Shown here: positions 8,960-54,290 of the stretch, in pieces
Layout of the letters: every line of letters begins with the position of its first letter
Numbering within the stretch: the stretch's first letter is position 1
Source: Selaginella moellendorffii
Taxonomy: Eukaryota > Plantae > Lycopodiophyta
Assembly (NCBI RefSeq): GCF_000143415.4
Contig: NW_003314374.1
Coordinates: forward strand, 22,604 to 86,603
DNA: 64,000 bases
Reading direction: 5' to 3'
Position numbers and translations under genes: made by a program
Notes under the pieces: generated by a model
Told to the model about the DNA's origin: nothing
The model's database searches: none
The model's input: only the letters and a program-made list of their open reading frames with translations

Positions 8960-9146
8960 GACGATGAAAGAGAAAAGCTGGAAAAATGTGATACCAAGTT
9001 TGTTTGCCCTAGATTCTTTTTGGATATTCTATTTGTAACGTGTCCTAGATTCGTGTAGAATGTTCTATTTGAAACGTTATGCCATATTTCTCGGTGTGTG
9101 TGAGCTAAGTAGGGTTTAGGGTGTGTGAAAGTAAGGGAAGAGCGCC

Positions 9147-12100
9147 ATGGATTTCATGCGCGGGGTCGATCAAGCGGTGGCTTTGTGCCGCGCATGCGTG
9201 GAGACGAATCGCGGCACGCGGATGCTCGTTATAGTGCCGTCCGGGACATCGGCGGAGGAGTTTAGAGGTATGGAGCTCGATCCATCGATCGATGATCGCC
9301 GGGTACTTGAGGGCTTTTTCTTCTTGCAGAGAGGGTGAGGGCTGTGCATTCTACCAATTTTCCGGAGCACGGAAATGTAGGCATCAAGAACATCATGGTA
9401 CGAAACCGCTGGAGAAAAAGCTCTGGGAAGTTTCTGAGATTTCTTGTGTGTTTTCCAGATCATGGTTGCGGGGTATTGGTATGCTTTCACCCATGGCAAC
9501 ATTGGAACGGCTGCTCAAGGAACCGATGCGCGATTTAGAGTCGAGCTTTTCGAGGAACAGGAGGAAGTCGTGGATCCTTCTCCATCCGGGACTCCCGCGA
9601 GAAGGGAGCTTGCGGCCGGAGAGGATGTGCGTCAGCAGCCGGCGAGAGAGGAGAGTAGACTTGGCAGAGCCGTGACTAGTTTGCGACGAACCCTCGAGGA
9701 GATGGAGGACATTCGTGGAACTGGTCCTGGAAGGGTGGTGAACAATGCTCAAGGGGTGAGGATCACTGCTCCTCCTCCAGCGAACGAGGTTATGGTTGGA
9801 TCTGCCGCGGACGAAAGGAATGACGACGTCCAGATGGTGGATGGTTCTGAGCCCGAGTCTAGAGCAGTGGCGGAAACCGATATCGCCGAGAGTAGCGGAC
9901 AGGAAACAAGGTCCGGCCCTTCTCTGCGATGTAACGACGTTCAGATGGTGGATGGTTCTGAGCCCCACTCTAGAGCAGTGGCGGAAATGGACGTCCCTGA
10001 GAGTAACGGACAGGAGACAAGGTCCGCCTCTTCTCTGCGACGATCGCACGACATGCCTTCTGAAAATCCAGCCGATAAGTCGCAGAACGGTTGTCGAGGG
10101 GTTTCTCCTCCTCCAGTGAAACTTGCCAGCTCCGCGACGAGCGACTGCAACATGGTGGATGTTTCCGTGCCCGAGGCTGCGGCGGCGACCGCACAGGAAA
10201 CAGAAGTGGAAGTTATGAAGGAGCTGGGAGAAAGAACTGTGGAGGGTGGTAACGATGAACAAGGGAGAGACGAGGTAGAGGTAGAAGGAGCTGGAAGGGA
10301 GGGACAGAAACTAGAATCGAGTACGGACGATTCGGAAGGATCTGAGGAGGAGGAGGATGAACTAGAAGGCAGGAGAGATGAGCGACAAGAAAACGAGGAA
10401 AAGGAAGTAGAGGCAGGACTGCAGATTGGAGACGAGAAGGAGCTAGAAACTGAGAAAGGCAGTTCTGAGAAAAATGTAGGAGACATGGAGGCTCAGAAGG
10501 ATGCGACAGCGTCATCAGTGCTTAATATTCTTCTCGGCTCCTCTGAGGGAACTGAAGATCGCTCGAACGCGAAAGCTAGTGGCGAGCCTACTCGAATCGA
10601 TGAGCCTGTTGCTACTGATGGCAATGGCAGTGCCTCAGGACACGATTTTATAGCCGAGAAACCTACAGCCAAGCGAAAACACGACTGGTCTTTGGATGCA
10701 TCGCACAAGAGGTCGAGAGTGGANNNNNNNNNNNNNNNNNNNNNNNNNNNNNNNNNNNNNNNNNNNNNNNNNNNNNNNNNNNNNNNNNNNNNNNNNNNNN
10801 NNNNNNNNNNNNNNNNNNNNNNNNNNNNNNNNNNNNNNNNNNNNNNNNNNNNNNNNNNNNNNNNNNNNNNNNNNNNNNNNNNNNNNNNNNNNNNNNNNNN
10901 NNNNNNNNNNNNNNNNNNNNNNNNNNNNNNNNNNNNNNNNNNNNNNNNNNNNNNNNNNNNNNNNNNNNNNNNNNNNNNNNNNNNNNNNNNNNNNNNNNNN
11001 NNNNNNNNNNNNNNNNNNNNNNNNNNNNNNNNNNNNNNNNNNNNNNNNNNNNNNNNNNNNNNNNCGCTGCTGATGGGCCTGTCTTGGACAACTTGTGTGA
11101 CAACGTCATAAGTCAGCATTTTTCTTCTGAAGCTTCTGGTTCAGATAGCGAAGAGGACGAGTCTCAAGCTCCCGTGGAGAATCCCGCATCAAGTCAGGTG
11201 AAGGCTCCTATGAAAGAGGCGGTTGGAAAAAGGAAGACTGTTACTTCCGATTCAGATAGTGAGGATGAAGAAGCTGCCACCCAAGCTCCGGTGGGAAAGA
11301 AACAAGAAGAGGCTGCTACAGTTGGATTAAAAAACACAGGCAGTGCTACTTCTGATTCAGATAGCGAGGACGACACTCAAGTTCCGGTGGAAAAGAATCA
11401 AGAAGAGGCTACTACAGTTGGAGTAAAAAAAACAGGCAGTGCTACTTCCGATTCAGATAGTAAGGACGAAGAAGAACTTCCGGTAGAAAATAATCAACAA
11501 GAGGCTGCCACAGTTGGAGGAAAAAAAACAGGCAATGCTACTTCCGATCCAGATAGCGAGGACGACACTCAAGTTCCGGTGGAAAAGAATCAGGAAAAGG
11601 CTGCTACAGTTGGAGGAAAACAAATACGCAGTTTAGAATATCAAACTAAGACGCAGGCTCCGCTGCAAAGTCAGAAGAAGAGTGCCGCGAAACAGGCTAC
11701 TGCGGGTAGAAAGAAGACGACCGACGTGGACAAAGACGATGCACAGCATAAGCCTGGAGGAAAAAAAACAGGCGGTAGCGAGGATGAAGAGGCCGACGCC
11801 GTAGAAACTCACACTAAGACTCGGGCTCCTCTGCAAAGTCAGACGCAGACCGTCGTGAAGCAGGTTACTGCGGGTAGAAAGAAGACAAGCGTTTCCGGCG
11901 ACGACGAAGACGATGCCCTGCATAATCTTGGAGGAAAAAAAACAGGCAATATCGAGGACGAAGAAGCCGAAGAAACTCAGACTCAGACTCAGGCCCCTCC
12001 GCAAAGTCAGACGAATACTGCCGCGAAGCAGGCTACTGCGGTTAGAACGAAGGCAAGCGTTTCCAGTTCACAGAAGCAGAGGCTTGAGAGTCGTGCAGCT

Positions 12101-32119: not shown

Positions 32120-35050
32120 TGTGTGTACTAGTTCAGATTTTATACATACATAATAACAATCTGTGAATAGAATATAAAAATATGCATATTTGATTAGCCC
32201 CACCCTAGCTTATATACAAGAGTAAGTGGTCTAGATTAAAACCAATCTAATGGCTACCAAAATCTTTACTATACTAATAATAGTATATAACTATAATCCA
32301 TACACTTGAACTTCACATTATCCCCTCCTCTTAAAAGGATGGGAGACAATTAGGTCATTGTGTTGATGGGCCAAGATCTGGAGGAACATTAAGTGAAGAC
32401 ATTGGTGGATTTATAGGCAATGCAATGTGTTTTTAATCCTTTTGTATGAAACATTTCAATTATTGTATATATACAATTTTTAGAGGATCGGCTTATTGAA
32501 TGTCATGCTAATTATGGTTTAACTTGCCACAACATTTGATATGGTCCTTTCTATTGGGCAATAAACCTTTTAGACAAACCATATACTATAAAATTAGGAA
32601 AATGAATCAACACTAGATCATCCATTTTGTACTTTGCAGATGCACATTGTAACGTTGTTGTTGTCCCACTTGTATATGGCTTAAGTGTTTAACAAACTTT
32701 GGTTGCATTAATGGAAGAATGCTCATCAAATATTGATTGCAAGATCTAGAATTGGCAACTTGTGGCAATTGTGAAGGTAAACTCAACTCTATCACAAATA
32801 TAAAATCATGACTATATAAGAGTTTTTATGGTGAAGCACCAACAATATATATATACCAAGATATGGTAAATAACCATCCCAATGTGAATGCTGAAAATTT
32901 ATATACTTCGCAATCATCCTTTTAAAGGTTTAAATGAGCCACTTCACTAAACCATCTATTTGTGAATGATAAACACTTGTGAAAGTGGCATATAACTAAT
33001 TCGGACATCAAGATATGAAATGTCTCAGCTATAAATATGGGCCTATTGTCCTAGAGAATTTGCTCTGAATAAGATTATTGGAATAACACTTGATTAAAGA
33101 GGAAGTATCTAATAGTAGTTGTAAACACATCAACAACAAGCCAAGTAATCGAAAGCAATAATAATATATTTATTGCTAGCAATTGATTGTGGAAAAGGCC
33201 CAATGAGATCAAAGGCCATTAGCTCAACTAATAGAAAATTATAATTGGCTCCAACTATCCTTCTGCAACACGAGGGGGAAATATTATAAACTTAACACTA
33301 AATACAGCTATATACATATTGGATGACATCATATCACATCTCTAGCCAATAGAAAGACCTGTACAGCTTCTCAATCACATAACGATGTCCTATATACCTG
33401 CCTAGAATAGAAGAGTTATGGTGAGCATAGAGAAAGTGTGGAATAAATATTGAATGCACCACCAATATTAAAGATTAAAGGTAAATGATCATTAGAATTG
33501 GTCCCCACAAATTAAAAAAGATTATTCTCAAGGTGATATTGAAAATGTAAATGCCAAAATGACAAGTCATTAGTGAGATAAAATTCTTAAATCCATCACG
33601 AAGCCTTTGGATTTATGGCTCAACCTTTTAAGTCTTACAAACCTCATCAAGAGAAGATAAATCTAATTCTACACTTTGTGGACATTGAATACACCAATAA
33701 CACCATATCTTCATTTAGAAAATCCATTAATGCTAGAATAACAAGCTCATTAAAAACATGAGAAGAAAGCAAAGAAGGGAGAGGAGCTCAAGAAAAGGTG
33801 TTAGCATCAACTATATAACTCTTCAAGCAATGAACAAATTTGAAGTTATATATTTAAAATTTGAAAGCCTATCAAGCAATATAACCAACCAAATTCTTCT
33901 ATTTTAATAATGAAGTGACTATAGCATAATCACCCTCTAACAATGTCCCTAAACTATACAAGTATACATGAAGCTTCTCAAAAGCTCAAACTACTACTAA
34001 ACACTCTTTTTATATCATGGAGTAATTCACCTTTGTTTGTTATAATATACAACTGATATATGCAATGAGATGATACTGACTAAGCACATTCGTGCTTTCT
34101 TGCATCAATACAACTTTGAGACTTATATTAAAAGCATCTACACATAAGATGAAAGATTAAGTGTAATCAAGATATGCCAAAACTAGATTGAGTTATCAAC
34201 ACCTTTCTGAGATTCGCAAATGCTTGCTCACAATCCCTAGACTAAAGGAAAGACAATATTGACGACTTTAGCAACACTTGTAATGGTGGAATATGATAAA
34301 AAATATGATTAACAAAACGACTAAGATATTGCACCTTGTCGAGAAAGCATTGCACATCATGCACACACTTTGGAGTAGGGAATCTTAGAACAACCACAAG
34401 TTTGTTAGGATCAATTTGCAAACATTTGCAAAAAATATAATGCCTAAGATAAATCATGTCCTTGGATCTAACACACACTTTGACTACTTCAACTTCAAAC
34501 CAACATCTTGTGAATATCACATATATGCTCTTGCCATGTCCCATCTAAGTGGATCAAGACATCATTGATGAAATCAGCAATCACTTTTGATATATCACAA
34601 AGAACCTTATTCATCATCCATTAGAAAATTGCCAAAATTTTGTTATGAGTACTAGCAAGTGCAAATAGTCAAGAAGGATGTTCCCAAAATTGCTATCCAT
34701 ACAAACAAGTTCACCCTAGACAATCCAAGAGGAAGAGGGTATATATATGGGATAGTCACTTTGTTTAGTAGATGATATTTGATGCAAAATTAAATACTCC
34801 CATCAAGCTTCATCACAAAGTGAAGTTCACACACCCAAGGACTCCAAAACTTTCAAATAACACCCTTCTCTAATATCTCTTTGACATTTACACGTAAAAT
34901 CCTAATCTCCTTTGGTGACTAATGCTAAATAAAAACCTTAATTGTACAAGCATCCCTAGTTGAAATAGGATGATATGTTACAATCTTGGCCCCAAATGAC
35001 AAGTCTGAGTTGAAGTCAAAGAGATCAACATACTCCTTGATCTAATCAAC
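32120..35050 (-). mobile_element. Degenerate Ty3/Gypsy element: RT/RH/integrase remnants, PPT and short 3' LTR
   Basis: RT thumb IDPNKLVVVLRFPTPKCVHDVQCFLDKVQYLSRFV (34242-34544); PPT (plus-strand tcccctcctcttaaaa, ~32320); LTR homologous to 54099-54240. Confidence 0.8.
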
Positions 35051-38747: not shown

Positions 38748-41700
38748 TGTAGCGCATGTGGTTTTTACCCTTTATCCTATGGTGATTTACCATAGGATAA
38801 CACCACAAAGCGGAACCTAAACCCTCTTTGTGCCACGTGACAGATGCCACGTGTCCAAAGGAACGTGGTGCAGAACTCAAGGTTCAGGGTTTTGGGCCAC
38901 TGAACGAAGGAATGGTGCAAAACTCCCAAGCATGGAGCCAAGGAGTGACGAAACTGAACCACGGAGCAACTCCCGAGCATACAGCCCAAGGAGCGAAGGG
39001 ACAGGAGCCCGGAGCGACTTGGAACAGTCCTAGAGCAACCAGCATCCCAATGCTAGGACCAGCATGCAAAATGGAGCCAAACGAAGTCTGGTGCTATTTC
39101 GGCATACCGGTGGCCTAACGTGAGGATATGGGTACTCCAGTAGCTAGCATGGAATGGAACTTGAGCTTAGACCCAAGCCGGACGCAAAACAAGGACAGAC
39201 ACGCAAGCGGAAGCTAGACTATGCCTCAGGTTGGTGGGCCATGCCCGACCTACCCATTATCCCTACTATACATTTGGAACCCCCCACAGCCCCTCCCCCC
39301 CCCCCCCCCCTTGAGGAGCACACGCTTTGGGCTTTCACCCCAAGCCTCCCTTAGTATCAGGAGTTAGTCTCTGGGACAAGCTCGAAACTTACTAAATATG
39401 GAATGTCTTTAGATTGCGAATTTGGACACGGGACGAACACCATTGTGTTCAGGCCGATTTCTACATTCCGTAGATATGCCAAATGAGCAAATCTGGACAC
39501 TTTCCATAAATAGCATTTGGGACCGAAATGAAACTAACACAAAGGGCATGATAGCGAGGGTGTTTGGCAGACACAATAAGCTATCATCCAGCGATATTGA
39601 GGGACCAATCTCAATACACGAGGGTTCTTGTCACTAGCCAGTGCAAGACATAACGAGACGGGAACTCCTTACCGGGCTAAGTATGCTTAGCTAATAACAC
39701 GTAGGAATTTTGTCCTTATGCTCGTCCGGTCTAAGTACACTCGAAATGCCCAATTAACTCCACTAGCACAAGAGGGACTAATAAAGGGTCTAGCAATACC
39801 GACCTCCTGCCGTCGTGGTAGTAAGGTAAGAGTGTCCGTAAGGACTGGTCGACAGGTAACTTTCGATACCCGAAGTCACATTCGCGACACTCTCCCCCCC
39901 TAGGGAAGATCAACGTCTTCGTCGATGCATACTCGAGTCTAGAATACTGCCAAGGAAACAACTCCAAAAAAAGTTCACGGTACTCACACTATATGAGAAA
40001 TGCACCAACTTAAATGAGTTAGGGGGCAACCTCTTTGTCTAACGCTGATGCGCTACCAACTCAGACACCTTCCGGCCGTCGCCGACAAGGAAATGACCAA
40101 CAAAGTTAGCCACCCTTGCTGCTCTGGGTGTCACCCAGCTACAAAAGTGTGATACGCCCCTACCCGCAAGGACATAGAGAGAGAAGCCAGAGGCCCCAAC
40201 CCTCCTGAGCAAAGAAACCAAACCCGTCAGTAAAGTTTAGATAGACTACTGTAAACAGGCAGTTAGAGTTGTTTACACGGTCACGCCCTTTCAACGGAAT
40301 AAGGAACATCGACAGAGAGGCGGGTTATGTAACCAGTCGACAGTAGCTACCCCATGACTAGAGATTTCAACATGCACACGAAGTGCCGAAGCCAGTCTGC
40401 CTATACTGGCCCAAACTTCAAAGATTAATATAGGGACTATATCAAAGTTATAGACAATGATATCTTAGAGTCGTAAGTATCATTCGATAAACTAGTATGA
40501 TAGGATAGGAACCACCAAGATCACTATTTTTGGAAAACATAGGATTCACCATCCAACAAAATTCAATAGCAAGTATATCATCAAGTAAACTCAATGAGAA
40601 AACTTAACTATCGAAGATTGGAGACAGTATGCTAAATAACTTACAAAAGATAACTCAAAGAACACAAGTATCCTTAACCAACAAGCACAATGCTCGTGAA
40701 TGTATCACCCGAAGGAAATAACATCATAATCTATCAAGACTAACTCGAGCAACAATCAACAAAACAGAATGAATATGGTAAGACCAACAAACACTTAGTC
40801 ATGCTAACCATCACATAAGTTAATATGAATAGATCCCGGTCAATAATACCAAGGAACTAGAGTTGCTTAAGTAAGTGTTAACAACGTCCTACCGATATCT
40901 CAAACCCAAGAGACCAATCCAGAGCAAACCACAAAGAACATGTGGTATTGCGAAAAGCCATAAGCCACTAAAAAGAACAACTAACCACCATGAAAGATCA
41001 TCAATCATCCCATATGCAGAATCTCCAATAACTTCTAACAAATGGAACAATGAGCACAAAACTCAAAGAACCAAAACTCGAAGAAGCCTATAACCAAGTC
41101 TTGCCTAATAATGATCACAAGTCTCATAAAAGCTAACTTCAATGCGAAAGAAGAAATCATGATGCAACTCACAATATCTTCCTCAACACATCCATAAGCC
41201 AAACTTCATAATGCCAAATCTAATGAAGAGCATATCTGCATCAATCCAAAAGCTAAGTATAACGAAGCTATGCTCAACAAGTGATCATCAAACGATCCTC
41301 CATGAATCCATCTATAGCAAGACATAACTCACTTCATAACAAGCCCAAAAAGAATCATTAATGATCGCTATATCCCAAACTCAAATCCAGCAAGGACTCA
41401 ACATTCTAATATCGATCACTAACTCTTCCTCTTGTAGAGTTAGCATAGTCCATACCTAAATCACTTTTCAAGGAAAAGCTAAAGCTCAGCCCTCTACTAA
41501 ATAATCTCGTCTAGAACACAACTAACTCAACTTGCCACTCAGTTTGTTTGAATGTCAACACAGTTGCTAACTAGCAAATGCACGAATGCCAACAACACAA
41601 AGCTATAGCCAAATCATCGACACTATCTTCATCAAGACTAATGAAACTCAATATCAATCCTTGGAAGGATATCTCATTTCACTCAGATCTCAATATCAAC

Positions 41701-44700
41701 AATGTCAATGACAAAGCATCACTTCAATGCCATCAACACCAAAACAAAGTTAGAAGAAAGCACGAGTGAATCACCACTCAAAACTCTCCAGCAACCAAGC
41801 TAACCAAAGTCGAAGATACCTTAGTCAGTATCCGAGACCAATCCTCCAACAAAACTTAGTTACAGATAACACTTCATCAAAGAGTGAGTCACCACGTCCA
41901 AGACTCAATGAAATCCAACACTACGGACTAGATGTAACCAAATGATATCGATAGAGGTAGAGTCGACATGTCAACATGAAAAGCTCATGTAAACCTAACG
42001 ACACGATCCTCCACAACACCATCCGGTAAAGCAAGCCTATCACTGCTAAATCATCATCGAGCGAAGCAAGTATCAACAGTCTTTTGACAAAGTCTACAAG
42101 TAATCACTAGTTGCAAAGCAACTAACAATCACCCTTCAACTTGCCTTCACAAGACCCGAACACTCATGTCATCGAGTCACATACTTGTCCAACATGAACA
42201 CAATACCCCAGGTATGAGATCAAAGTTCATAGACAAGCACAAACTAAATGACCACTCGAATCCAACTCAACCACAATAAGCTCACTAATGCATTTAGTCA
42301 ATAGCTCTGAGCATGCCTTGAAGAGGCTAGCTATGCAATCAACACTCAGTCGAAACTAAAGTGAAGACCATAAGATGGACTCATATCGGTACACAACCTC
42401 CTAATAGACATAGCTATAGTACGGGTACCAACATCTCAACCTTGAACAACTAAATTGAACATCACCATCCTTAGCCAAGACGTAGGGCCACCAAGACTAA
42501 GTCAAGATCAGTGAAAGCTCACTACTCTCATAGAGTTTAACGTAATGCAAGGTGCAACCTACCACCAAGCACAACGCTACAAAAGAAAGGTACAAGATCA
42601 CCTTTCTGAAAAAAGTGTATAGCCACTTTTCTACACCAACTCCAGACTCTATCCAACTCAATTGCCACAGCCCCAAAAGTCAGCATCCCTGTCGGGTCGC
42701 ATTATACAAACTATTTACTAAGGTTTAAGCCAACTGAAGCCAACTCCAACCCCTTCAATAGTTTGTACTAGCTTACGAAAACGGAATGGTTTTCGAGCAA
42801 AGTGACTAACAGATTAGCTATTGGAAAAGCCTAAGAAAATTTGTGGAAAATTTCCATCCTAGAGAAAGAATGATTCTCAGTCTAGGATTGCAAACTTTCA
42901 AAACTCAACCAACTTCCTCCTACTAACAACTTCATATAGGTTCACCTCAACACAAATTCTCATGATCTATCAATATGCTTAAGCATCGAACATCTTTGCC
43001 CGTTTAACTGATATCCAACACAGACATCCGCAAAGTGCAAAATGAACATCCAAAGTTTGATCACGAAGACCACATCTTCGGATATCCACATTGCACTAAC
43101 ACTCTTCCTCAATTACCTTCAAGATCCAATGTGAAGCCAAAACACTAATAAGAAAAATGACATGGAAAATCAAGTTTCAAGGAAAATTCCTCATCACTTG
43201 AAATAACAATGCCACCTCCACTAACACAAGTGTTAGTGATGTCAATGCCCCAACTACACATCTTCTCCATTCGATAATCTACTCCAAGTGTTAACGGATA
43301 AACGAACAAGTCATAGCAAGTGAATGTTATAACCTTTTTCCAACATCTAAGGGGCAAACTCAAGGAAACAAGGTGCCAACTTAAACTCAGCATAATGGAT
43401 CACCATTGAGAATCCAGTCAAAGCTACTACAATGCTACTTTGTGCAAGTAGACTTAGCTTCTCCACTTTGGGGTTGATCATCGTCTAACCAAGCAACTTC
43501 GTAAACACATTGCTCATTATCACATGGATATGATATAAAATCACAATGACTTGATCATCAATTGAGCAACACCACGAGCAACACCTATGTCACTACTACA
43601 AAAGTTTATGTAAGTATCAAGTGTCAACTCAATTCAACAAAATGCAACATAAATGCCACACTTCACTGATAGAGATTTACAACATTGAACACCACTAACT
43701 TTTGTTCATAACACAGACAAGCTCATGCCACTCTCTTTCCGACCAAACTCAAAACTAATCCAACACCAAGCTACTCAAGGAGCAATAGCAAGGTTCCCCA
43801 GAAAAGAATTGAACATTGCAACCCAAGTCTTCCAATAGCAAGCCTAGACAAAATGGTATAGCACTTCACCGCTATCCATCCCACAACTTACCATTGTAAG
43901 ACCATCATCTCCAACATGCATCAAAGTAGGGACCCTTGATTGCATAATATGAACATGAGCAATGAGTTAACACCTCATTGCAAATCATCTCTCCAAGAAG
44001 AGAAAATGATTTACGTGTTTGATCCTTCGTCCCCGACGACTCTCTTTTCGGTCTCATCTTTGACTAAACCTCAAGCTTGCTTTCGCACTGCCTTCAGTTC
44101 AATCGAAGAAAAGTTTATGAGAGAGCACGGCCATGACTACTTGAACTAATAGACTAATCCCTATAGTCTTGATTGATCCACTTATAATCATGCCTAGGAA
44201 GGATCCACTAGTGCCGTGCTAAACAGTTACAGACCAGCCTATTTGCCACTCATAGCAAACCCAGGGAGTTTGCTTTCACCTATGGTACAAAGAACAACTC
44301 ATAGAACCACCGATAGGCTAACATTAATCCTGCCAACTCAAAGTGTAACCTTGAGTTGCTAATGTGCCTCACTCATGAGCCCAAGCGCAAACTCGTACTA
44401 TTGGAACAACTCAATCCTTCCTATGAGCCCAAGAGCAAGCTCATATAATACGGTACAAAACGGTACAACTCAATCCTTCCTATGAGCCCAAGAGCAAGCT
44501 CATATAATCCGGTACAAAACGGTAACCAAAACCATACCCAAGGAACTATTGCGAAGTCTTTGCACCCAAACGTGTACCCACTCGGATCATCGTTTTCATC
44601 TCTACGTATGCAACGAGACTAGTTGCCCAATCTCATTGAATAGTACTCGCTGAGACTCATCCTCTGATACCAAATGTAGCACACTTGGTTTTTACCCTTT

Positions 44701-45216
44701 ATCCTATGGTGATTTACCATAAGATAACACCACGAAGCGGAACCTAAACCCTCTTTGTGCCACGTAACAGATGCCACGTGTCACATGCCACATGTCCAAA
44801 GGAACGTGGTGCGGAACTCAAGGTTCAGGATTTTGGGCCACTGAATGAAGGAACGGTGCCAAACTCCCAAGCATGGAGCCAAGGAGTGACGGAACCGAAC
44901 CATGGAGCAACTCCCGAGCATACAGCCCAAGGAGCGAAGGGACAGGAGCCCGGAGTGACTTGGAACAGTCCTAGAGCAACCAGCATCCCAATGCCAGGAC
45001 CAGCATGCAAAACAAAGCCAAATGGAGTCTGGCGCTATTTCGGCATACCGGTGGCCTAACGTGAGGATATGGGTACTCCACTAGCTAGCATGGAATGGAA
45101 CTTGGGCTTAGACCCAAGCCGGACACAGAACAAGGACAGGCACGCAAGTGGGAGCTAGACTATGCCTCAGGTTGGTCGGCCATGCCCGACCTACTATACA
45201 TTTGGAACCCCCCACA
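38748..45216 (-). mobile_element. LTR retrotransposon with paired ~541-bp LTRs and a non-coding interior (LARD-like)
   Basis: LTRs 38748-39288 and 44675-45216 with TG..CA ends; Met PBS tggtatcagag (44662-44672); G-rich PPT at 39289-39316; no long ORF in the 5.4-kb interior. Confidence 0.9.
44376..44525 (+). repeat. ~59-bp tandem repeat (about 2.5 copies) in the LTR-element leader
   Basis: acaactcaatccttcctatgagcccaagagcaagctcatataat..ggtacaaaacggt repeated. Confidence 0.85.
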
Positions 45217-46004
45217 GGAATGGCCAGGAATGCGGTAGTGAGATTCCTCGCGACCTTAGTGGTGGGTGTAAGCTCGTTTTGAGCTATCCCCAAACAAACA
45301 CTTCGTTGGCGCTGCTCATTCTTGCAGTGCGCAATGAAGCGGCTGTTGATCCTGGAGTGGGCGAGAAATGTGCGTGGTTGTGCTAGCGCACAGCCTTGCA
45401 GTGGCCCAAGCGTGCTCTGCTTGTGGATGCGCTCCTGGAGAATGCGGCGGCGGCGGATGCAAGCGAGAAACCCTAACGCTAGGGTTTTTCCCGTCGCTTC
45501 ATACCTTTCGGTGTGAGAAAATCCAGCGCCCGCAGCCATGAAGTCGAGTAGCTATAGCTTGTAATTAGGTTTGCCTATCCGTACGGCGTGTTTCTTTGCG
45601 CGAGATTCTGTGAGAAATCCAAGGTTTTTTTTTTTACCATGCCACGTCTTCTCATGTATCCCATTAGTTTATTCATGGGAAAACAGAGTTTTCTGTAAGT
45701 AAGGTTTCCTTAACAATTATTTTTAAGGAGGACCTTCCTGTGATTAAGGCGTGGGATCTGTCTCAGAGTAAGAGCACAGCAACTTGTGTTGTTTTTTTCT
45801 TTTTACCAATCAAAACACAGTTGTAGTCAAAGGTGCGCTTACATATTTTAGTTCAGCGCGTAACCAAGGACTGCATGGTAAGTTTGGGGGAACTAATCCT
45901 TATGTTGTTCACAGTCCAAAGAGGCATAAATATCGAATCTATTATGTTTCGATATGATGCTAAAGTGATGGATAGTCCTGTCTAGAAGACAGAGTTCCTG
46001 GTGC

Positions 46005-48158
46005 TCAGCTTGAGTTTGCTGAGTCGTCGAGCTGTGGTGGCCTATTGGCCGGTTCTCTCCAGATATCAAAGAGAATTTCCAAGACCGCTTGTACCGGTGT
46101 CAGGGGGCTGGTGAGAATGATATGATCCAGACCACTAAGGATGAGTCGTCTCAATGCATAGCGATGGAATCCTTTTTCCACGAAGCATTCAACGAGATTA
46201 TCAATCTCAAGGACGATACCACCAGCGGTATTAATCAGATAAAAAAGTGCAAAGACTTGCCCCAGGATCACTTTGGATGATTTTGCAGCGGGCCAGTTTG
46301 AATCTCGATGAATGTATAGCAAGACTTTGAATGGAAGTGATCGGTGCTTATCATATTTTGTGGTTAAGAAAGTACCGTCAACCCGTATGATCTGGATCTG
46401 AAGGCTCAAGAAGTGAGCGGACAGATTCACAAGCGAGCCGTCCGTGCCTACGAATGGATTATCCATCTCGTTCTGCATGGCAAGAAATCGTAATGGATAT
46501 ATCCAGAATGGATTTCCTTCGGATTTGACTTGATCAGGGTCAAGGAAACGGAGGATCATGGGGTTATTCATTGACACCAGATCGTCCATGTACCGGAAAG
46601 TGTGTTCGAATAGGCGCAGCAGATCATACCGGCCTAAACGAGTGAGTCGAGTGATAAAGTTATACTCGAAATAGAATAGGTACAGGTTACACCACAAAGG
46701 TGAGCATGAGAAGCCCATAGGAATCCCTCGGACTTGTCTCCATACTCTGTTACCCAGCCGGACATATGTGTGCCGGATGATAAAGTGATTTAGCTCGATG
46801 ACTTTCGTTGGATCCATTCTGGTGGCCTTTACTGATGAGTGGTGTAGAGGTTTCCATTCAGCCTCAAGCTCGCCGTTCTTCTTTTGAATCAGAAAAAGGT
46901 CTTTATGGAGGTGGTTTTGGTGCGCAAAGGCCAAATTGACAAGGTTTGTCATGCCCGTCGTGAGGCCTTGATCCCCCTCGAGGGGGATGGCCTCATAGCA
47001 CTTTGTGATATCTCCCGTATAGATCGTGGTGATCTTGTCGGGAAGATTAATCGCGAACTCCTGTGTGGATCCAAGGATCCAGCACGCGTTCGTTTTTCCT
47101 CCAAAGAATTTTGCCCGTGCGTAGAAATCATCGGCTACGTTTTGTAGCGCCTCCTGTATCCCTTTTAGGATAGCTGTTAGGCAAATAGTGATTTCAGAGA
47201 AGACACATCCATCCGCATTTGTTAACCAGTGCATCTTATTCTTGTGCACTTTATAGATTCCCATGAGGTAAGGGAGATCTGGTTGCTGCGGCGGGAATTC
47301 CTGTAAGGGTGGTTCACTGAGCAGTTGTTTTACAACTTGCTCAGGCATCTCAGGGACATTATTGTCCGAGACCACTAGTGAAAAGTCGTCACTATTCATC
47401 CGTGCAAGCGCTTGCTCCTGGGCCAACGTTTTGCAAAAGAAGGTGGGTGTGTTGGCCGCTTTATCTGTGCCACTGATGTACAAGTGTTTGTGTACCCACT
47501 CCAATTGCCGCTTTGCCTCCGGGGTGGTCATCACATCTACAATCGGGGTGGTCTGGCAATTTTGTACTGCCATTTGAACCCGGTAGTTGATATGCTGTTT
47601 AACAGCAGCTTCGTTGCTGGGCCAGTTACGGATGTAGACATCGGGGATTATACTGGCAATCCGATCCCAGGCTTCACAGACTTCAGCAATGACTTTTGCT
47701 GTCTGGAGTGGTTTCGGGGTGTTGTGATTGAGACCTTTCTCAATGACAGTTGTGAGTATGCGTGAGCCAAGGATCTTTGGATCCAATGTACGCACATGTC
47801 CAGTCTCGTCGAGGTAAGTCACCCATGGCCACCGTTTGCATTCGCAACCCAGTGGTGCCTGAGTGTCCCAATTACAGAAAACCTCTTTGGGTTTATAAAA
47901 GTCGTGTTTGATCTGGGGTTCATACCTCCAGCCAAATACGATGGGATCCAGGAGTTCCGCGTCTAGGCCTATCATTTCCAGGCACTCCCTCATAAGAGTA
48001 CAGATACTGATCCTCTCGAATCCGGCGCTAATATATCGGAGATGTACAAATTTTTGTTCACACTCCATTTCCTCTTTGACCAACCATTTACGTCTGGCCA
48101 AATGATGGATGTAGTGTAAAGTACACTGTGGAAGCAATCACATGAGCGCTTTCGTTAG
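46005..48158 (-). CDS. Penelope-like reverse transcriptase with CxC domain; no endonuclease visible
   Basis: CECKRWPWVTYLDETGHVRTLD (CxC), DKAANTPTFFCK, YTGDITKCYEAIP, WRQVRGIPMGFSCSPLWCNLYL, FRYMDDL, AHFLSLQI, YDK. The 710-aa frame is open; a splice acceptor at 48159 is followed by one in-frame TGA just upstream of the ORF. Confidence 0.9.
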
Positions 48159-48192
48159 CTACCAATCATGGAAGGAGAAAACAGAAATTTAT

Positions 48193-50773
48193 TTATCGCT
48201 GCTTTCTTGCACCAAGCCTTTTGCATAGCTTCTGTTTATTCGAGCTTGCATTGGCCTCGGACGTCTTGGAGATTGATGGTGGTGTGCCTGTCTCCTGTGA
48301 TGTCAGTCCCGTGGATGTTTGTCCGTTAGGACGATCACGTTTCCGATTAGGTGGTAAGCCTTGAGACCTTGCCGGCGTGCGTTGTGAGGATAGAGTAGGT
48401 GAGAAAGCTCCATTGCTTTCGCTACCGTCATGTCGTGAAGTCGTTGGGGATCGGTACTGCTGGACGGGGATGAACTTACATATGTTCATCTTAGTTTGTC
48501 CATGCGGGATGAACTCCAGATCCGGGTTGGCTGGTTTTTTCGCCACCTCAATAGCAGCTGCTTGCATCCATTCTCGGATTTGAAGGAAGGCAGCTATCTG
48601 GAGGATCACTTGCGGATTAGCCGTAAGTAGGGACAGGAAGATGGCGAGGCAGTCTGACGACGTCAAGCTTGAGTCTGGCCAATACTTGTCCAGGTTGTTA
48701 AGCATGTACCAGAACAAGGAGTCAAGCTAGACAATTCCTCCTTCACATCCCTGGCAATCACAGTGACAGTACGGTCGAAGCTGATTCCATGTACGTTGAT
48801 CTCCTTGTGATAGGTTCCAGCTTTTTGTATTCAAAAAGGCATCACCATCACAGCATCCATGGAAGGCAGCCTGCTTGAAAACCTCATCCGCGGTCTTTTG
48901 GAATGGGATAGCTGGTTTGTAAGCATAGTTTCCCAACGTTGCATGTCGGTATGATTCTTCCAGTGTCTGTTTTGACCACTGTACTGCATCCGGTCGTAAC
49001 AAAGCCGCCATCTGGATCCAGTCGGATGCCTCCAAGGGGGATGTCCATCCTAAAGGATTCGTTAGCATCCAGAACTTATGCGGTTCTGGAAGGCGGTGGG
49101 AGGCTGCATTGAGAACTCGTGTGGTGGCGAAGGGAAATTTCCATCCACTCAAATTCTCCAACGGGTCAAACATGATACGACCATTGTCAATGCGGTCCAC
49201 GTTTGCTCCTTCCAGAGTATCCGGCTATGATGGGATGAGTCCAGTCATGAGCGTCCGTGCACTTTGGCTCAAGAACTCGAAGCCATTGCTAAGGTCGATC
49301 TGTGGTTTTCCCAGATCAATACCTTTCCCGTATGAGCCTTTATACCCTGTAACCCGGTTGTATTCTTGGGAACACTGGAGCATTCCAAGTAATCCCTGGT
49401 TTGGCGGAGGAGAAATTAACAAGTTCTTTTTCCATGTCTGCCATCCACCGTCGTAGTAGAGCCTGGTTATCATTGACTTGATCGGTAAGGAGTGTCCAGA
49501 CTAGGCGCCACCATTCTTTGGTTTCAACCTGCTGGAAGAGGCAGAGGTATTGCTTGTTCTCGCCAACTGCCTCGGATTCCGGTACTGTGAGCAGCTTATC
49601 CGCAATCTTTTTCTCATATGCAAAGATCTCACGTAAGCGCTCAGGTTTCTTTGCGGCTAACAGCAGTAAGAAGTACTGCACTACCGGGACGGGAGCCACA
49701 AAATCATCAGTGTTCGCGTACTCCGTCATCTCGGGTAGCCAGAAATCCTGGAAAGCCACGCATCAGTCCATATCCGGTATGGTGGGAAAGTAGGGATGGA
49801 TCGCATGGCGTTTTGTATCGGCAGCCAGGTATCACACCTTGGCACGGCTGTCCCTCGCGGGTATTTTTGGTTAAGCAGATCGACTAGGCCGTTTTCGGTA
49901 CATTCGTCCGAAGCGTAGGATCATCCGCCCGGTAACCCGATACCGACCACGACCAAAACGATTTCCCTAAGAAATTCCTATGTCACCTCCTACGGTTTGG
50001 GTGTCCGGGGGGTACCTGTATCATGGAAGACGAGGATTAGTAATGCAATCTCCACTAGCTCTATCTCTCATTTTGTGAAAGTACGAAGCTAGGTTTCAAA
50101 ACTGAACTGAGATTTGCACGACTGATGCTCGCGAGCCAATGTACTCAGGTACATGCCCGGGCCGCACATCAGAAGTGACTTCCAAGGATTAGAACTAAGG
50201 AACATGCTCAACCTGATCGCTATCCGTTGACTCATGGATCTCGCCGTCTGGACCAGTCGCTGTCATCCCGCCTTTTTTCTAAGCGGATGATTAGAAGCTG
50301 GAACAGTCGGGAGTACAAGCGCTACCTGGGCAGAGTCAAGGAGAGCCCCTTGTGTTGCTGTGGTGTTTAGTTCCAGCGCTCTAGCCGAGAGAGATTCCTA
50401 CAGGCCAAGGGTAAGAAAACGCAGAAAAACGAATCGCTTATACCCGTTTTTGCGTGGCCAGGAATGCGGTAGTGAGATTCCTCGCGACCTTAGTGGTGGG
50501 TGTAAGCTCGTTTTGAGCTATCCCCAAACAAACACTTCGTTGGCGCTGCTCATTCTTGCGGTGCACAACGAAGCGGCTGTTGATCCTGGAGTGGGCGAGA
50601 AATGTGCGTGGTTGTGCTAGCGCACAGCCTTGCAGCAGCCCAAGTGTGCTCTGCTTGTGGATGCGCTCCTGGAGAATGCGGCTGCGGCGGATGCAAGCGA
50701 GAAACCCTAACGTTAGGGTTTTTCCCGTCGCTTCATACCTTTCGGTGTGAAAAAATCCAGCACCTGCAGCCAT
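48193..50773 (-). pseudogene. Intron-containing upstream ORF of the PLE (unknown protein), disrupted by stops and frameshifts
   Basis: Exons 50773-50444, 50397-50326 and 50278-50213 separated by 46-47 nt GT-AG introns; acceptor at 50016; ORF segments 49759-49340, 49473-49225, 49200-48727 and 48717-48193 join into about 600 codons. Confidence 0.65.
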
Positions 50774-52299
50774 GAAGTCGAGTAGCTATAGCTTGTAATT
50801 AGGTTTGCCTATCCGTACGGCATGTTTCTTTGCGCGAGATTCTGTGAGGAATCCAAGGTTTTGTTTTTTACCATGCCACGTCTTCTCATGTATCCCATTA
50901 GTTTATTCATGGGAAAACAGAGTTTTCTGTAAGTAAGGTTTCCTTAACAATTATTTTTAAGGAGGACCTTCCTGTGATTAAGGCGTGGGATCTGTCTCAG
51001 AGTGAGAGCACAGCAACTTGTGTTGTTTTTTTCTTTTTACCAATCAAAACACAGTTGTAGTCAAAGGTGCGCTTACATATTTTAGTTCAGCGCGTAACCA
51101 AGGACTGCATGGTAAGTTTGGGGGAACTAATCCTTATGTTGTTCACAGTCCAAAGAGGCATAAATATCGAATCTATTATGTTTCGATATGATGCTAAAGT
51201 GATGGATAGTCCTGTCTAGAAGATAGAGTTCCTAGTGCTCAGCTTGAGTTTGCTGAGTCGTCGAGCTGTGGTGGCCTATTGGCCGGTTCTCTCCAGATAT
51301 CAAAGAGAATTTCCAAGACCGCTTGTACCGGTGTCAGGGGGCTGGTGAGAATGATACGATCCAGACCACTAAGGATGAGTCGTCTCAATGCATAGCGATG
51401 GAATCCTTTTTCCATGAAGCATTCAACGAGATTATCAATCTCAAGGACGATACCACCGGCGGTATTAATCAGATAAAAAAGCGCAAAGACTTGCCCCAGG
51501 ATCACTTTGGATGAGTTTGCAGCGGGCCGGTTTGAATCTCGATGAATGTACAGCGAGACTTTGAATGGAAGTGATCGGCGCTTATCATATTTTGTGGTAA
51601 GAAAGTACCGTCAACCCGTATGATCTGGATCTGAAGGCTCAAGAAGTGAGCGGACAGATTCACAAGTGAGCCGTCCGTGCCTACGAATGGATTATCCATC
51701 TCGTTCTGCATGGCAAGAAATTGTAATGGATATATCCAGAATGGATTTCCTTCGGATTCGACTTGATCAGGGTCAAGGAAACGGAGGATCATGGGGTTAT
51801 TCATTGACACCAGATTGTCCATGTACCGGAAAGTGTGTTCGAATAGGCGTAGCAGATCATACCGGCCTAAACGAGCGAGTCGAGTGATAAAGTTATACTC
51901 GAAATAGAATAGGTATAGGTTACACCACAAAGGCGAGCATGAGAAGCCCATAGGAATCCCTCGGACTTGTCTCCATACTCTGTTACCCAGCCAGACATAT
52001 GTGTGCCGGATGATAAAGTGATTTAGCTCGATGACTTTCGTTGGATCCATTCTGGTGGCCTTTACTGATGAGTGGCGTAGAGGTTTCCATTCGGCCTCGA
52101 GCTCGCCGTTCTTCTTTTGAATCAGAAAAAGGTCTTTATGGAGGTGGTTTTGGTGCGCAAAGGCCAAATTGACAAGGTTTGTCATGGCCGTCGTGAGGCC
52201 TTGATCCCCCTTGGTCAATTTTTCATTTTGCATGTGGATGCTTGTAATATTGGTTTTGGAAGTGTGTTGATGTAAGAGAGCTTGAGTGTGTCTGGTCAA

Positions 52300-54290
52300 T
52301 ACCATCTTAACCATACATTACAACTAGTAAAAGTAAATTACTCCATGACAAAAAAGGAGTGTTTAGCAACAGTTTGGGTTTCGAGAAACTTTATATTTAT
52401 TTATATGGTTCTCAAATATTACTAAAAGGTGATCATGCTGTAATTACTTCATTATTGAAGTAAAAGAACTTGGTTGATCTTATTATTTAGTGGGTTTGAA
52501 AGTTAATATATATGATTTTGATGTTGTTTATCATCCGGGGAGATCTATGGCTAATTTTAACACTCTTTCTTAAACTCCTTTTTTTTCTTCACCTTCTTTT
52601 AATGTTTTTGACGAGCTTGTTATTCCAATATCTGTGGATTTTTTTACGAGGACTTTGTGCTGTCAATGGATTTTGTACTTGATGTTCAGTGTCCACAAAG
52701 TGCAGAGTAAGATTTACTTTTTCTTGATGGGGTTTGTGAGGATCAAAATGTTGACTTGTGAATCCAAAGGCTTCACGATGGGTTTAAAAATCTTGCATCA
52801 CTTGCTAATAACTTGCTATATTGGTATTTACATTCTCAATATCACGTTAATGATAACATTCTTTATTTTGTAGAGACGGATTTTAATGATTATTTACGGC
52901 TGGTGGTGCCTTCAATATTTATTCCATGCTTTCTCCATGCTTACCATGATTTTCCTATTCTAGGCAGACATATGAGATATTGTTGTGTGACTAAGAAGCT
53001 ATAAAGATCTTTTTATTGATTGGAAATGCAACATAATATTATTTAGTATGTGCATAGCTAGATTTGGTGCCAAGCTTATAATATTCCTCATTATACTGTG
53101 AAAGTACGGTTGGAGTCAATTGTAGTTTTTTGTCTATTTGCATTGTTGGCTTTTGATCTAATGGGGCCTTTTCCACGGTTAATTGTTGGCAATGAGTACA
53201 TTATTATTGCTTCTAACTACTTGACTTATGAGGCAGAAATCAGAGCTCTTGCTAGTGCATCTACAATTATTGTTAGATACTTCTTCCTCAATCAAATGGT
53301 ATTCTAGTATTCTTATCTAGAGTAAATTCTTTCAGATAATGGTCTTACATTTATGGCTAAGGCATTTCATGTTTTATTAGGATACACCATACTTTCATGA
53401 GTGCTTATCATCTACGCTAGATGGTTTAGTGAAACGGTTTGTTCGGACCTTCAAAAGAATGATCATGAAATACTTGAATATTTTTTAGCATTCGGATTGG
53501 GATGATTATTTGCAATCTCTTAAATATGCATATGTCATAGAGATGTAGAGTTTTATTAGTGCTTCACCATATAAACTCTTATATGGTCATGATCCAATAA
53601 TACCAACTGAATTGAGTTTACCTTCATGATTAGTATGAGTTGTGGATACTAGGTCTTGGGATTAGTATTTGATGAGCATTCTTCCACTGGTCTGAGTTGA
53701 GTCTGCCAAACACTTGGGCCATGTACAAATGAGACAACAATGGCATTATAACTTCTATTATCACACCTGTAAAGTACAAAGTGGATGACTTAGTGTTAAT
53801 CCATTTTCCAAATCTTACAGTAGATGGTTTATTTAAGAGGCTTCTTGTTAAGTGGAAGGGACCATATTGGGTGTTGTGGCAAGGTGGACCAAAAGTTTAT
53901 AAAGTTTGGCATGATGTCTAATAAGCCAATCCTTTAGAAATTGTGTATGTGCAACAGTTAAAACACTTCATACAAAGGGATCAAGAATAATTAGCACTAT
54001 CTACAAATCTACCGATGCCTCCTCTTGATGTTCCTCTAGCCCAGCTCGTCCACTAGAGAACCCTAACTATCTTCCATCATTTTAAGAGGAGGGGATGATG
54101 TGAAGTCTAAGTGTACAGTTATGATTTAGTATATTAATATTAGTGTAGTGGGATTTTGATAGCCATTGAATTTGTTTCAATCTAGACCATTCACTCCTAT
54201 ATATAAGCTAGGTTTTTGGGCTAATTGATATGCACATTTCAGTATTCCATTTCCATATTTTATGCACTCGCAATATAAATTTTATAAACA
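52300..54290 (+). mobile_element. Degenerate Ty3/Gypsy RNase H-integrase, PPT and 3' LTR
   Basis: NYSMTKKECLATVW, LLAFDLMGPFP..GNEYIIIASNYLT, SDNGLTF; PPT aagaggagggga, then LTR tgtgaagt from 54099. Confidence 0.85.

What the first reader, a model, noticed from the sequence alone, without database searches (positions are those of the whole stretch)
45221..52211. Interstitial Penelope-like element with a CxC-RT, no visible endonuclease, and an extra large ORF
Seen: a 710-aa RT with a CxC..GHV motif, DKAAN, GIPMG and FRYMDD, arranged as a long copy plus an upstream 5'-truncated copy (pseudo-LTR). Known: CxC-linked PLE RTs (Naiad/Chlamys) typically carry an N-terminal GIY-YIG endonuclease, and EN-minus PLEs are mostly at chromosome ends. 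Here I see no GIY-YIG motif on either side of the RT and no telomeric array; about 600 codons of unknown protein sit where the EN would be. Inference: an EN-less PLE that integrates internally using another protein or pre-existing breaks. EN-minus PLEs have been reported from Selaginella, so this may be a known family in an unusual context.
Basis: partly seen in the sequence, partly recalled or inferred. Interest (0 to 1): 0.8.

Follow-up and report, generated by a model that had tools for sequence, protein, structure and literature searches.

The report
Known EN-less Selaginella PLE-X copy outside rDNA
This is a dead, partly duplicated copy of an already published endonuclease-less Penelope-like retroelement of the spike moss Selaginella moellendorffii that normally sits at one exact spot in the 28S rRNA gene; here it has landed elsewhere, and its relatives carry a short 28S-derived 3' tail that may explain how the family inserts without a nuclease.

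Summary
On the minus strand, 45221-52211 is a Penelope-like element with an intact 710-aa RT (CxC, GHVRT, DKAAN, GIPMG, FRYMDD), an upstream partial copy, no GIY-YIG and no telomeric array.

It is not new. The host is Selaginella moellendorffii, and the family matches the EN-less, Chlamys-related 'PLE-X' elements of Craig et al. 2021 (PMC8557442): CxC RT, no endonuclease, and an N-terminal extension with a CxCX1-8C motif. Sister copies 95-98% identical in DNA sit at one precise 28S rDNA site (L001, L009, L010).

The 'extra ORF' is that extension, a roughly 520-codon ORF1. Relatives carry it as a separate gene. It has a C-terminal RGG-rich tail and no recognisable nuclease fold.

The window copy lies outside rDNA and is dead. 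ORF1 has a 2-bp deletion and a TAG stop.

One addition: every canonical 3' end, including two non-rDNA copies and all tandem junctions, ends in 16 nt matching the 28S sequence just downstream of the target. This suggests homology-primed, nuclease-free insertion, which is inferred, not shown.

The canonical hammerhead reported for the family was not found. A scan note on the same stretch (s1-431201) proposes alternative splicing; RNA-seq gave no reads to test it.

The parts
45221..52211 (-). Whole PLE-X-derived insertion: an upstream partial copy plus a 3'-truncated copy.
   Evidence: Self-BLAST. BLAST to sister copies L001, L003, L009, L011 and L012. No 28S at either flank.
49864..52211 (-). 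Upstream 5'-truncated copy (pseudo-LTR). It holds the last ~2.35 kb of a unit: the RT C-terminal half (frameshifted ORFs 51502-52314 and 51239-51505), the 3' UTR, a 593-bp terminal module and the tail.
49864..49879 (-). Canonical 3' terminus TCTGCTTAACCAAAAA. It matches the 28S sequence immediately downstream of the family's rDNA target. Here it forms the tandem junction with the next unit.
   Evidence: The tail is present at every canonical 3' end and every tandem junction: L001, L009, L012 and the window, plus the non-rDNA copies L003 and L011. Its 28S identity is shown by the Rfam LSU alignments.
49864..50454 (-). The 593-bp 3'-terminal module of the unit (ref 4804-5396). The downstream copy lacks it.
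   Evidence: The window copy and the old copy L010 both stop just before it.
45221..49863 (-). Downstream copy. It starts at the full-length 5' end (TACCCGCGAGGG...) and ends prematurely at unit position 4803. It is 94.8% identical to the intact 28S-resident copy L009.
48193..49729 (-). ORF1, the published 'N-terminal extension', about 512 codons from the ATG. It is broken by a 2-bp deletion near 49384 and a TAG at 48729-48727. It ends in a Ser/Thr/Pro/Arg/Lys-rich tail in this family; the relatives' ORF1 has an RGG-rich tail.
   Evidence: It is homologous to the separate ORF1 of relatives L004, L007 and L008.
48745..48768 (-). ORF1 cysteine motif CHCDCQGC, the CxCX1-8C motif of PLE-X.
   Evidence: The cysteines are conserved across the ORF1 family.
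46005..48137 (-). ORF2, an intact 710-aa PLE reverse transcriptase. It has no ATG upstream of its conserved N-terminal module.
47838..47846 (-). CxC motif (CEC) of the RT.
   Evidence: Invariant in the N-terminal alignment A5 and nearly invariant (at least 90%) in A1.
47451..47465 (-). DKAAN (the DKA variant of the PLE DKG motif).
46581..46727 (-). RT motif B (GIPMGFSCSP) through motif C (FRYMDD).
45221..46004 (-). 3' UTR segment. It contains a palindrome with the plant telomere/telo-box unit (AAACCCTAACGCTAGGGTT, 45468-45486; its twin is at 50702-50720).

Best explanation
The stretch is a defective copy of the published EN-less 'PLE-X' Penelope-like retroelement family of Selaginella moellendorffii, a Chlamys-related lineage that lost the N-terminal GIY-YIG endonuclease.

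Shown:
- A full unit is about 5.24 kb. It comprises a ~130-nt 5' UTR; ORF1 (~520 codons, with a helical N-domain and a Cys-rich CxCx..C domain followed by a low-complexity tail that is RGG-rich in relatives); ORF2 (a 710-aa RT with CxC, DKA and a long motif A-B spacer); and a ~1.4-kb 3' UTR ending in TCTGCTTAACCAAAAA.
- Sister copies sit antisense in the 28S gene, exactly between CGCCAGT and TCTGCTTACC. There is no target duplication or deletion.
- The terminal 16 nt of the element equal the 28S sequence just downstream of that site.
- This tail is carried to non-rDNA sites and into every tandem junction.

Inferred:
- The RNA's 28S-like 3' end base-pairs with a pre-existing 3'-OH end of the 28S sense strand, such as a nick, a break or nascent DNA. 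The RT then extends that end. This would give site-specific insertion without an endonuclease, much as Athena/Coprina use telomere-complementary 3' ends.
- ORF1 acts as a Gag-like nucleic-acid-binding or chaperone protein, not a nuclease.
- Occasional priming at unrelated breaks, or later DNA rearrangement, gives dispersed copies.

The window copy is one of these dispersed copies. It lies outside rDNA, is a partial tandem, has ORF1 broken twice, has lost its 3' end, and shows no transcripts in the runs tested.
For: Host and family: the RT is 95% identical to SELMODRAFT_427748, and longer gene models carry the same N-terminal extension.

Published description: the features match Craig et al. 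2021.

28S insertion of the same family:
- L001 has an LSU hit spanning the element.
- L009 has a 28S right flank and L010 a 28S left flank.
- The exact site comes from the Rfam LSU alignments.

3' tail: it is present at all canonical ends and junctions, including the non-rDNA copies L003 and L011.

Coding state:
- L009 has both ORFs open, 523 and 710 codons.
- The window copy has a 2-bp deletion, a TAG stop and a truncated 3' end.

No endonuclease: Pfam, PDB sequence and fold searches were all negative.

ORF1:
- It is a separate ORF conserved in relatives.
- HMMER found 430 representative clusters.
- The model shows an N-terminal helical bundle, and no nuclease fold was matched.
- Some members are fused to a zf-CCHC knuckle or give a weak Ty3-capsid hit.

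Position: no telomere arrays in the window.
Against: - I could not align the copy to the authors' consensus, because the supplement is not held. Family identity therefore rests on matching features and the 28S target.
- The canonical hammerhead ribozyme stated for PLE-X was not detected by Rfam in the window or in 12 related loci.
- In 28S-resident copies the tail cannot be told apart from the flank itself. In dispersed copies it could be passive 3' transduction from rDNA donors rather than a homing device.
- No uninterrupted Selaginella 28S was on hand. It is therefore unknown whether the extra A (TTAACC against the consensus TTACC) is native.
- The window copy does not end in the tail, so its own insertion mechanism is not shown.
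- The ORF1 C-domain was modelled only at moderate confidence and was barely tested by the fold searches (note).
Confidence: 0.75

Rival explanations
1. The 28S-like tail is only 3' transduction, that is, read-through from rDNA-resident masters. Targeting is then done by protein: the CxC domain or the ORF1 Cys motif binds the 28S site and recruits a host nuclease, or exploits rDNA-specific breaks.
For: Craig et al. suggest the CxC domain may guide targeting. The tail equals the flank in 28S copies, so read-through would produce it automatically. The non-rDNA junctions of L003 and L011 show no obvious homology to the tail.
Against: A transcript would have to end reproducibly at exactly CCAAAAA in all lineages. 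All tandem junctions keep the tail. No DNA-binding or nuclease domain could be recognised.
Confidence: 0.3
2. ORF1, or the conserved pre-CxC module of ORF2, is a novel or highly degenerate endonuclease, so the element is not truly EN-less.
For: ORF1 is large, conserved and of unknown fold, and its C-domain was poorly tested. The pre-CxC module is predicted as beta-beta-beta-alpha-alpha-beta-alpha, loosely like the GIY-YIG topology. Craig et al. infer secondary loss of GIY-YIG in this lineage.
Against: No GIY-YIG or other nuclease was hit by Pfam, PDB profiles, Foldseek, VIA-align (best Z 2.4) or the Atlas. The conserved residues of the module are G, R, Y and W, with no conserved Glu or Asn. 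The RGG-rich tail in relatives and the gag-type fusions of ORF1 family members point to nucleic-acid binding.
Confidence: 0.1
3. The window copy did not arrive by retrotransposition. It is a DNA-level fragment of a tandem PLE-X array that moved or was broken by rearrangement or by insertion of other repeats.
For: It lacks the canonical 3' end and shows no target-site duplication. Both borders abut other dispersed repeats: 44675-45217 recurs at 38748-39289 and in L002/L003, and 52217-54263 recurs inverted at 32153-34158. Loci L010 and L012 show rDNA/PLE-X fragments rearranged on large scaffolds.
Against: No 28S sequence accompanies it. A 5'-truncated upstream copy is the usual product of PLE retrotransposition. 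The same 3' endpoint recurs in L010 with a different flank, which hints at a real alternative RNA end.
Confidence: 0.2

Closest known systems
PLE-X families of Selaginella (PLE-X1_sTam and its S. moellendorffii counterpart), Craig et al. 2021, PMC8557442
   Same: Same host species. CxC-type RT with DKA. No GIY-YIG. N-terminal extension with a CxCX1-8C motif. Partial tandem (pLTR) structure. Sister copies inserted at one precise 28S site.
   Different: This copy is outside rDNA, 3'-truncated and mutated. No canonical hammerhead ribozyme was found. In relatives the 'extension' is a separate ORF1 rather than a spliced N-terminus. The 28S-derived 3' tail is not mentioned in the paper's main text.
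Chlamys / Naiad (N-terminal EN+ PLEs)
   Same: CxC linker, DKA motif, long spacer between RT motifs A and B (the IFD position), pLTRs.
   Different: They carry an N-terminal GIY-YIG endonuclease and mostly insert genome-wide or in microsatellites. Here there is no endonuclease, and there is an extra ORF1.
Athena / Coprina (EN-minus, telomere-associated PLEs; Coprina Sm1/Sm2 are reported from S. moellendorffii, PMC13159263)
   Same: No endonuclease. According to PMC8557442 they attach to exposed DNA ends using RNA 3' sequences complementary to the target. That is the working model proposed here, with 28S in place of telomeric repeats.
   Different: Those clades lack the CxC motif, sit at chromosome ends and carry telomere-repeat complements plus hammerheads. 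This element has none of these at its end.
R2 and other rDNA-specific non-LTR retrotransposons
   Same: Insertion at one conserved 28S position. Two-ORF layout similar to some LINEs, with a Gag-like ORF1.
   Different: R2 encodes its own restriction-like endonuclease and has a different RT clade. PLE-X has none, and it lies antisense to the rRNA.

Membership tests
Penelope-like elements (general) | PLE-type RT (DKx motif upstream of the core, motifs A-C, thumb) and partial tandem/pLTR organisation | tested here: met
   Motifs located. RVT_1 weak hit. 98 homologues with the same motifs. Partial tandem structure. No RT phylogeny with reference clades was possible.
Naiad/Chlamys clade | CxC motif between the N-terminal region and the RT | tested here: met
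   CEC at residues 98-100, followed by HVRT. The two Cys are invariant in A5 and nearly invariant (at least 90%) in A1.
Naiad/Chlamys clade | DKG changed to DKA/DK | tested here: met
   DKAAN at 225-229.
Naiad/Chlamys clade | Insertion-in-fingers domain (longer spacer between RT motifs A and B) | tested here: inconclusive
   About 95 residues lie between D376 and G471. No canonical PLE was aligned for comparison.
Naiad/Chlamys clade | N-terminal GIY-YIG endonuclease | tested here: not met
   Pfam, PDB sequence profiles and fold searches were all negative.
PLE-X (EN-less Chlamys subgroup) | CxC RT without GIY-YIG, plus a unique N-terminal extension bearing CxCX1-8C | tested here: met
   ORF1 has CHCDCQGC at 48745-48768. 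It is homologous to the extension in gene models P0002, P0003 and P0007.
PLE-X (EN-less Chlamys subgroup) | Insertion at a precise 28S rDNA position (spike-moss families) | tested here: met
   Met at family level: L001, L009 and L010. Not met by the window copy itself.
PLE-X (EN-less Chlamys subgroup) | Canonical hammerhead ribozyme | tested here: not met
   No Rfam hammerhead at gathering score in the window or L001-L011 (L012 was not scanned). None at E<=10 in the UTRs. The only sense-strand CUGAUGA lacks helices I and III.
PLE-X (EN-less Chlamys subgroup) | Sequence match to the published consensus | not testable with these tools
   Supplementary files are not held.
Athena/Coprina | Telomeric position and a terminal telomere-repeat complement | tested here: not met
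   No tandem telomeric repeats in the window. The element ends in 28S-like sequence.

The most novel reading that the evidence does not exclude
The 16-nt 28S-derived 3' terminus is the homing device. A plant retroelement would then insert site-specifically into rDNA with no endonuclease, by annealing its RNA end to an existing 28S DNA 3' end. It would be helped by a previously uncharacterised, widespread Gag-like ORF1 family. Dispersed copies like this one would be its mis-primed products.
Probability: 0.35. Interest if true: 0.6.

Novelty: already known. Interest (0 to 1): 0.3.

Why it matters
The element family, its lack of an endonuclease, its extra N-terminal protein and its rDNA targeting were all published in 2021, so the finding is not a discovery. 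That paper leaves open how the family inserts without a nuclease.

- A 28S-matching 3' tail is carried by every canonical copy, including those outside rDNA.
- At least one 28S-resident copy has both ORFs open.
- ORF1 is a separate, widespread gene with no nuclease fold.

If the tail is the targeting device, PLE-X would extend the end-annealing strategy of telomeric PLEs, and by analogy telomerase, to an internal chromosomal site.

Tried and rejected
- Hammerhead or other ribozymes: Rfam found none at gathering score or at E<=10 on the whole region and on both UTR pieces. Regex for CUGANGA...GAAA hit only coding sequence. Folding the 45221-type junction was not significant (z -1.9).
- GIY-YIG or any nuclease: Pfam, PDB sequence searches, Foldseek, VIA-align and Atlas on the ORF2 N-terminal module and on ORF1 all gave nothing. 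Language-model look-alikes gave only unnamed fungal clusters and weak viral capsid leads.
- Expression and splicing: three RNA-seq runs labelled as the same species gave 0-1 partial reads. The proposed intron between ORF1 and ORF2, and the alternative-acceptor idea of scan note s1-431201, therefore could not be tested. The GTAAGT at 48479-48474 joined to the acceptor-like CCACAG at 48131-48126 (splice point 48126/48125) would be out of frame.
- Telomeric context: none.
- Empty site or target-site duplication for the window copy: none was recoverable. Both flanks are other repeats, one bordered by a poly-G run in its second copy.
- The authors' consensus and Gladyshev & Arkhipova 2007 could not be read.
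- An RT phylogeny with reference PLE clades and TERT was not run, because no tool supplied reference sequences.
Full report
**What is there.**
- The element lies on the minus strand. ORF listing gives an intact 710-aa ORF at 46005-48137. Upstream of it are three shorter ORF pieces: 49759-49340, 49200-48727 and 48717-48193.
- Self-BLAST shows 50455-52211 equals 45221-46978 at 97.7% over 1758 bp, so there is a partial tandem.
- Pfam sees only a weak RVT_1 match and nothing in the other ORFs.
- The window has no tandem telomeric repeats.
- Rfam finds no family at gathering score anywhere in the window, so there is no rRNA. It finds nothing of note at E<=10 over 43500-54000.

**Host and family.**
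- The RT is 95% identical to a Selaginella moellendorffii protein. Longer gene models of that genome (P0002 at 1002 aa, P0003 at 949 aa) carry the same upstream protein fused to the RT.
- More distant relatives occur in Chara braunii, the moss Ceratodon and many unnamed metagenome or Logan contigs.
- Craig et al. 2021 (PMC8557442) describe exactly this kind of element as 'PLE-X'. It is a Chlamys-related family in Chara and two Selaginella species. [quoted passage not shown] It has a unique N-terminal extension thought to be separated by an intron and carrying a CxCX1-8C motif.
- According to that paper the spike-moss families insert at one precise 28S position. The authors state that how they insert without an endonuclease is unknown.
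- I found no later paper on the mechanism.

**Sister copies and the true unit.** I fetched seven other copies from the S. moellendorffii assembly and compared them with the window.
- L001 and L009 (95-98% identical in DNA) are inserted in a 28S gene, antisense to the rRNA. L010, an older copy, has a 28S left flank.
- Four copies end at the same 3' terminus...GTCGATCTGCTTAACCAAAAA. They are L001 and L009 in 28S, and L003 and L011 at two unrelated non-rDNA sites. The same string joins successive units in L001, L009, L012 and the window.
- The real unit border in the window is therefore 49864/49863. 52211-49864 is the 3' 2.35 kb of an upstream copy. 49863-45221 is a copy that starts at the full-length 5' end (TACCCGCGAGGG...) but stops at unit position 4803 and lacks the last ~593 bp.
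- The old copy L010 stops at the same base with a different flank. I cannot explain this.

**The target and the tail.**
- The Rfam LSU alignments of the two flanks give the uninterrupted 28S as ...GGGCCAYUUUUGGU-AAG-CAGAA(C/G)UGGCGAUGCGGG....
- On the element's strand the insertion lies exactly between CGCCAGT and TCTGCTTACC, with no duplication or deletion.
- The last 16 nt of the element (TCTGCTTAACCAAAAA) equal the 28S sequence immediately downstream of the site, apart from one extra A relative to the eukaryotic consensus.
- In 28S-resident copies this stretch could simply be flank. Its presence in non-rDNA copies and in every tandem junction shows that it travels with the RNA.
- This is the basis for the proposed mechanism. 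The 3' end of the RNA pairs with a free 3'-OH of the 28S sense strand, and the RT extends it. PMC8557442 says Athena and Coprina use telomere-complementary 3' ends in this way.
- The mechanism is inferred, not shown. Passive 3' transduction is the main rival.

**The 'extra ORF'.**
- In L009 the upstream frame is open for 523 codons and the RT for 710, so at least one rDNA copy may be functional.
- In L001 and the window a TAG replaces a Trp codon. The window also has a 2-bp deletion near 49384.
- Related contigs L004, L007 and L008 carry a separate 532-581-aa ORF about 110-130 nt upstream of an ATG-initiated RT ORF. It aligns with the Selaginella ORF1.
- The conserved core is WN..RP[YF].RC.C......C.G..IW.DHA.W...N.LD.FFP. 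In the relatives it is followed by an RGG-rich tail; the Selaginella tail is instead Ser/Thr/Pro/Arg/Lys-rich.
- A profile search of 1.8 billion representatives found 430 clusters, 84 of them below 1e-30.
- Some members are fused to a CCHC zinc knuckle, give a weak Ty3-capsid hit, or are fused to WD40 repeats.
- An AF2 model (pLDDT 67, pTM 0.70) shows a confident N-terminal helical bundle, a disordered linker and a moderately confident C-domain.
- Foldseek/PDB, VIA-align (best Z 4.7, generic helix bundles) and the ESM Atlas gave no meaningful match. Sequence searches of Pfam and PDB gave nothing either.
- My reading is a Gag-like nucleic-acid-binding protein. This is an inference, and the C-domain was barely tested by the fold searches.

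**No endonuclease.**
- The region of ORF2 before the CxC holds a conserved module, LGR..[LIV].K...G..H..Y.SRA.EW.
- Its model is beta-beta-beta-alpha-alpha-beta-alpha at pLDDT 74.
- Neither a PDB sequence profile nor Foldseek, VIA-align (best Z 2.4) or the Atlas links it to GIY-YIG nucleases.
- It has no conserved acidic or Asn residue. A dead relic cannot be excluded, but an active GIY-YIG can.

**Points that do not fit.**
- Craig et al. say these families have canonical hammerheads, and Cervera and De la Pena 2014 found canonical type-I hammerheads in S. moellendorffii PLEs. I found none in the window or in eleven related loci scanned (L012 was not scanned). The hammerhead-bearing elements may be the Coprina Sm1/Sm2 families of the same genome.
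- ORF2 of the Selaginella family has no ATG before its conserved module. A good acceptor (CCACAG|TGT, 48126/48125) precedes it, which fits the published intron idea. The obvious GTAAGT donor at 48479-48474 would be out of frame.
- RNA-seq from three runs gave essentially no reads. Splicing, and the alternative-acceptor idea of the scan's other note on this stretch (s1-431201), therefore remain untested.

**Verdict.** The element is a member of a family published in 2021. This particular copy is a dead, off-target or rearranged one. The 28S-derived tail, the open-ORF rDNA copy and the breadth of the ORF1 family are modest additions that make the open mechanistic question testable.

Noticed in passing
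L009:5129-10365 (GL377659.1, S. moellendorffii): A 28S-resident copy of the same family has both ORFs uninterrupted (523 and 710 codons) and a canonical tail. It is a candidate active master copy.
   Followed up: partly
window 45221; L010:9573: Two independent copies end at the same internal position (unit position 4803/4804) with different flanks. The 15 nt before it (CCGCATTCCTGGCCA) loosely resemble the 28S left flank CCGCATCGCCA. This may be an alternative RNA 3' end or the border of a 593-bp terminal module.
   Followed up: partly
window 45468-45486 and 50702-50720: A palindrome, AAACCCTAACG(C/T)TAGGGTT, containing the plant telomere/telo-box unit lies in the 3' UTR and is conserved in sister copies. 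Its role is unknown.
   Followed up: no
window 48729-48727; L001:9003-9005: The same TGG-to-TAG nonsense change in ORF1 occurs in the window copy and in the 28S copy L001. It is absent from L003 and L009. It is either a shared ancestry of defective copies or a hypermutable CWG site.
   Followed up: no
window 50017-50016 and 48160-48159 (minus strand): Two similar acceptor-like strings, tcttccatgatacag and tccttccatgattggtag, lie upstream of ORF1 and of ORF2. Scan note s1-431201 also remarked on them. There was no RNA evidence either way.
   Followed up: partly
window 44675-45217 = 38748-39289 (90%); also in L002 and L003: The 3' flank is a dispersed repeat. Its other copy in the window is bordered by a run of about 17 G on the minus strand at 39290-39320.
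   Followed up: no
window 52217-54263 = 34158-32153 inverted (70%): The AT-rich 5' flank is another old repeat whose alignment stops exactly at the element border. The whole window is repeat-rich, with several further pairs in 12-24 kb and 40-64 kb.
   Followed up: no
window 44403-44520: Two tandem copies of a 59-nt unit lie just beyond the 3' flank repeat.
   Followed up: no
L002 (GL377639.1) 8001-11930: A second S. moellendorffii PLE-X-like family (P0007, 43% RT identity) has the same ORF1 motif. At this locus it is not in 28S and lacks the 28S tail.
   Followed up: partly
L004:9000-9230: A Replitron HUH fragment lies next to a PLE-X-like two-ORF element on a metagenome contig. The host is probably an alga or bryophyte.
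   Followed up: no
P0186, P0229, P0239: ORF1-like domains occur fused to a G-beta-type WD40 propeller and to a CCHC zinc knuckle (with a weak GRF zinc-ribbon hit over the Cys motif). One also gives a weak Ty3-capsid hit.
   Followed up: no
L010 and L012: rDNA fragments with PLE-X pieces are scattered and rearranged on megabase scaffolds. They share a recurrent breakpoint at position ~1580 of the L001 right flank. L010 has a PPR-DYW gene between the pieces.
   Followed up: no
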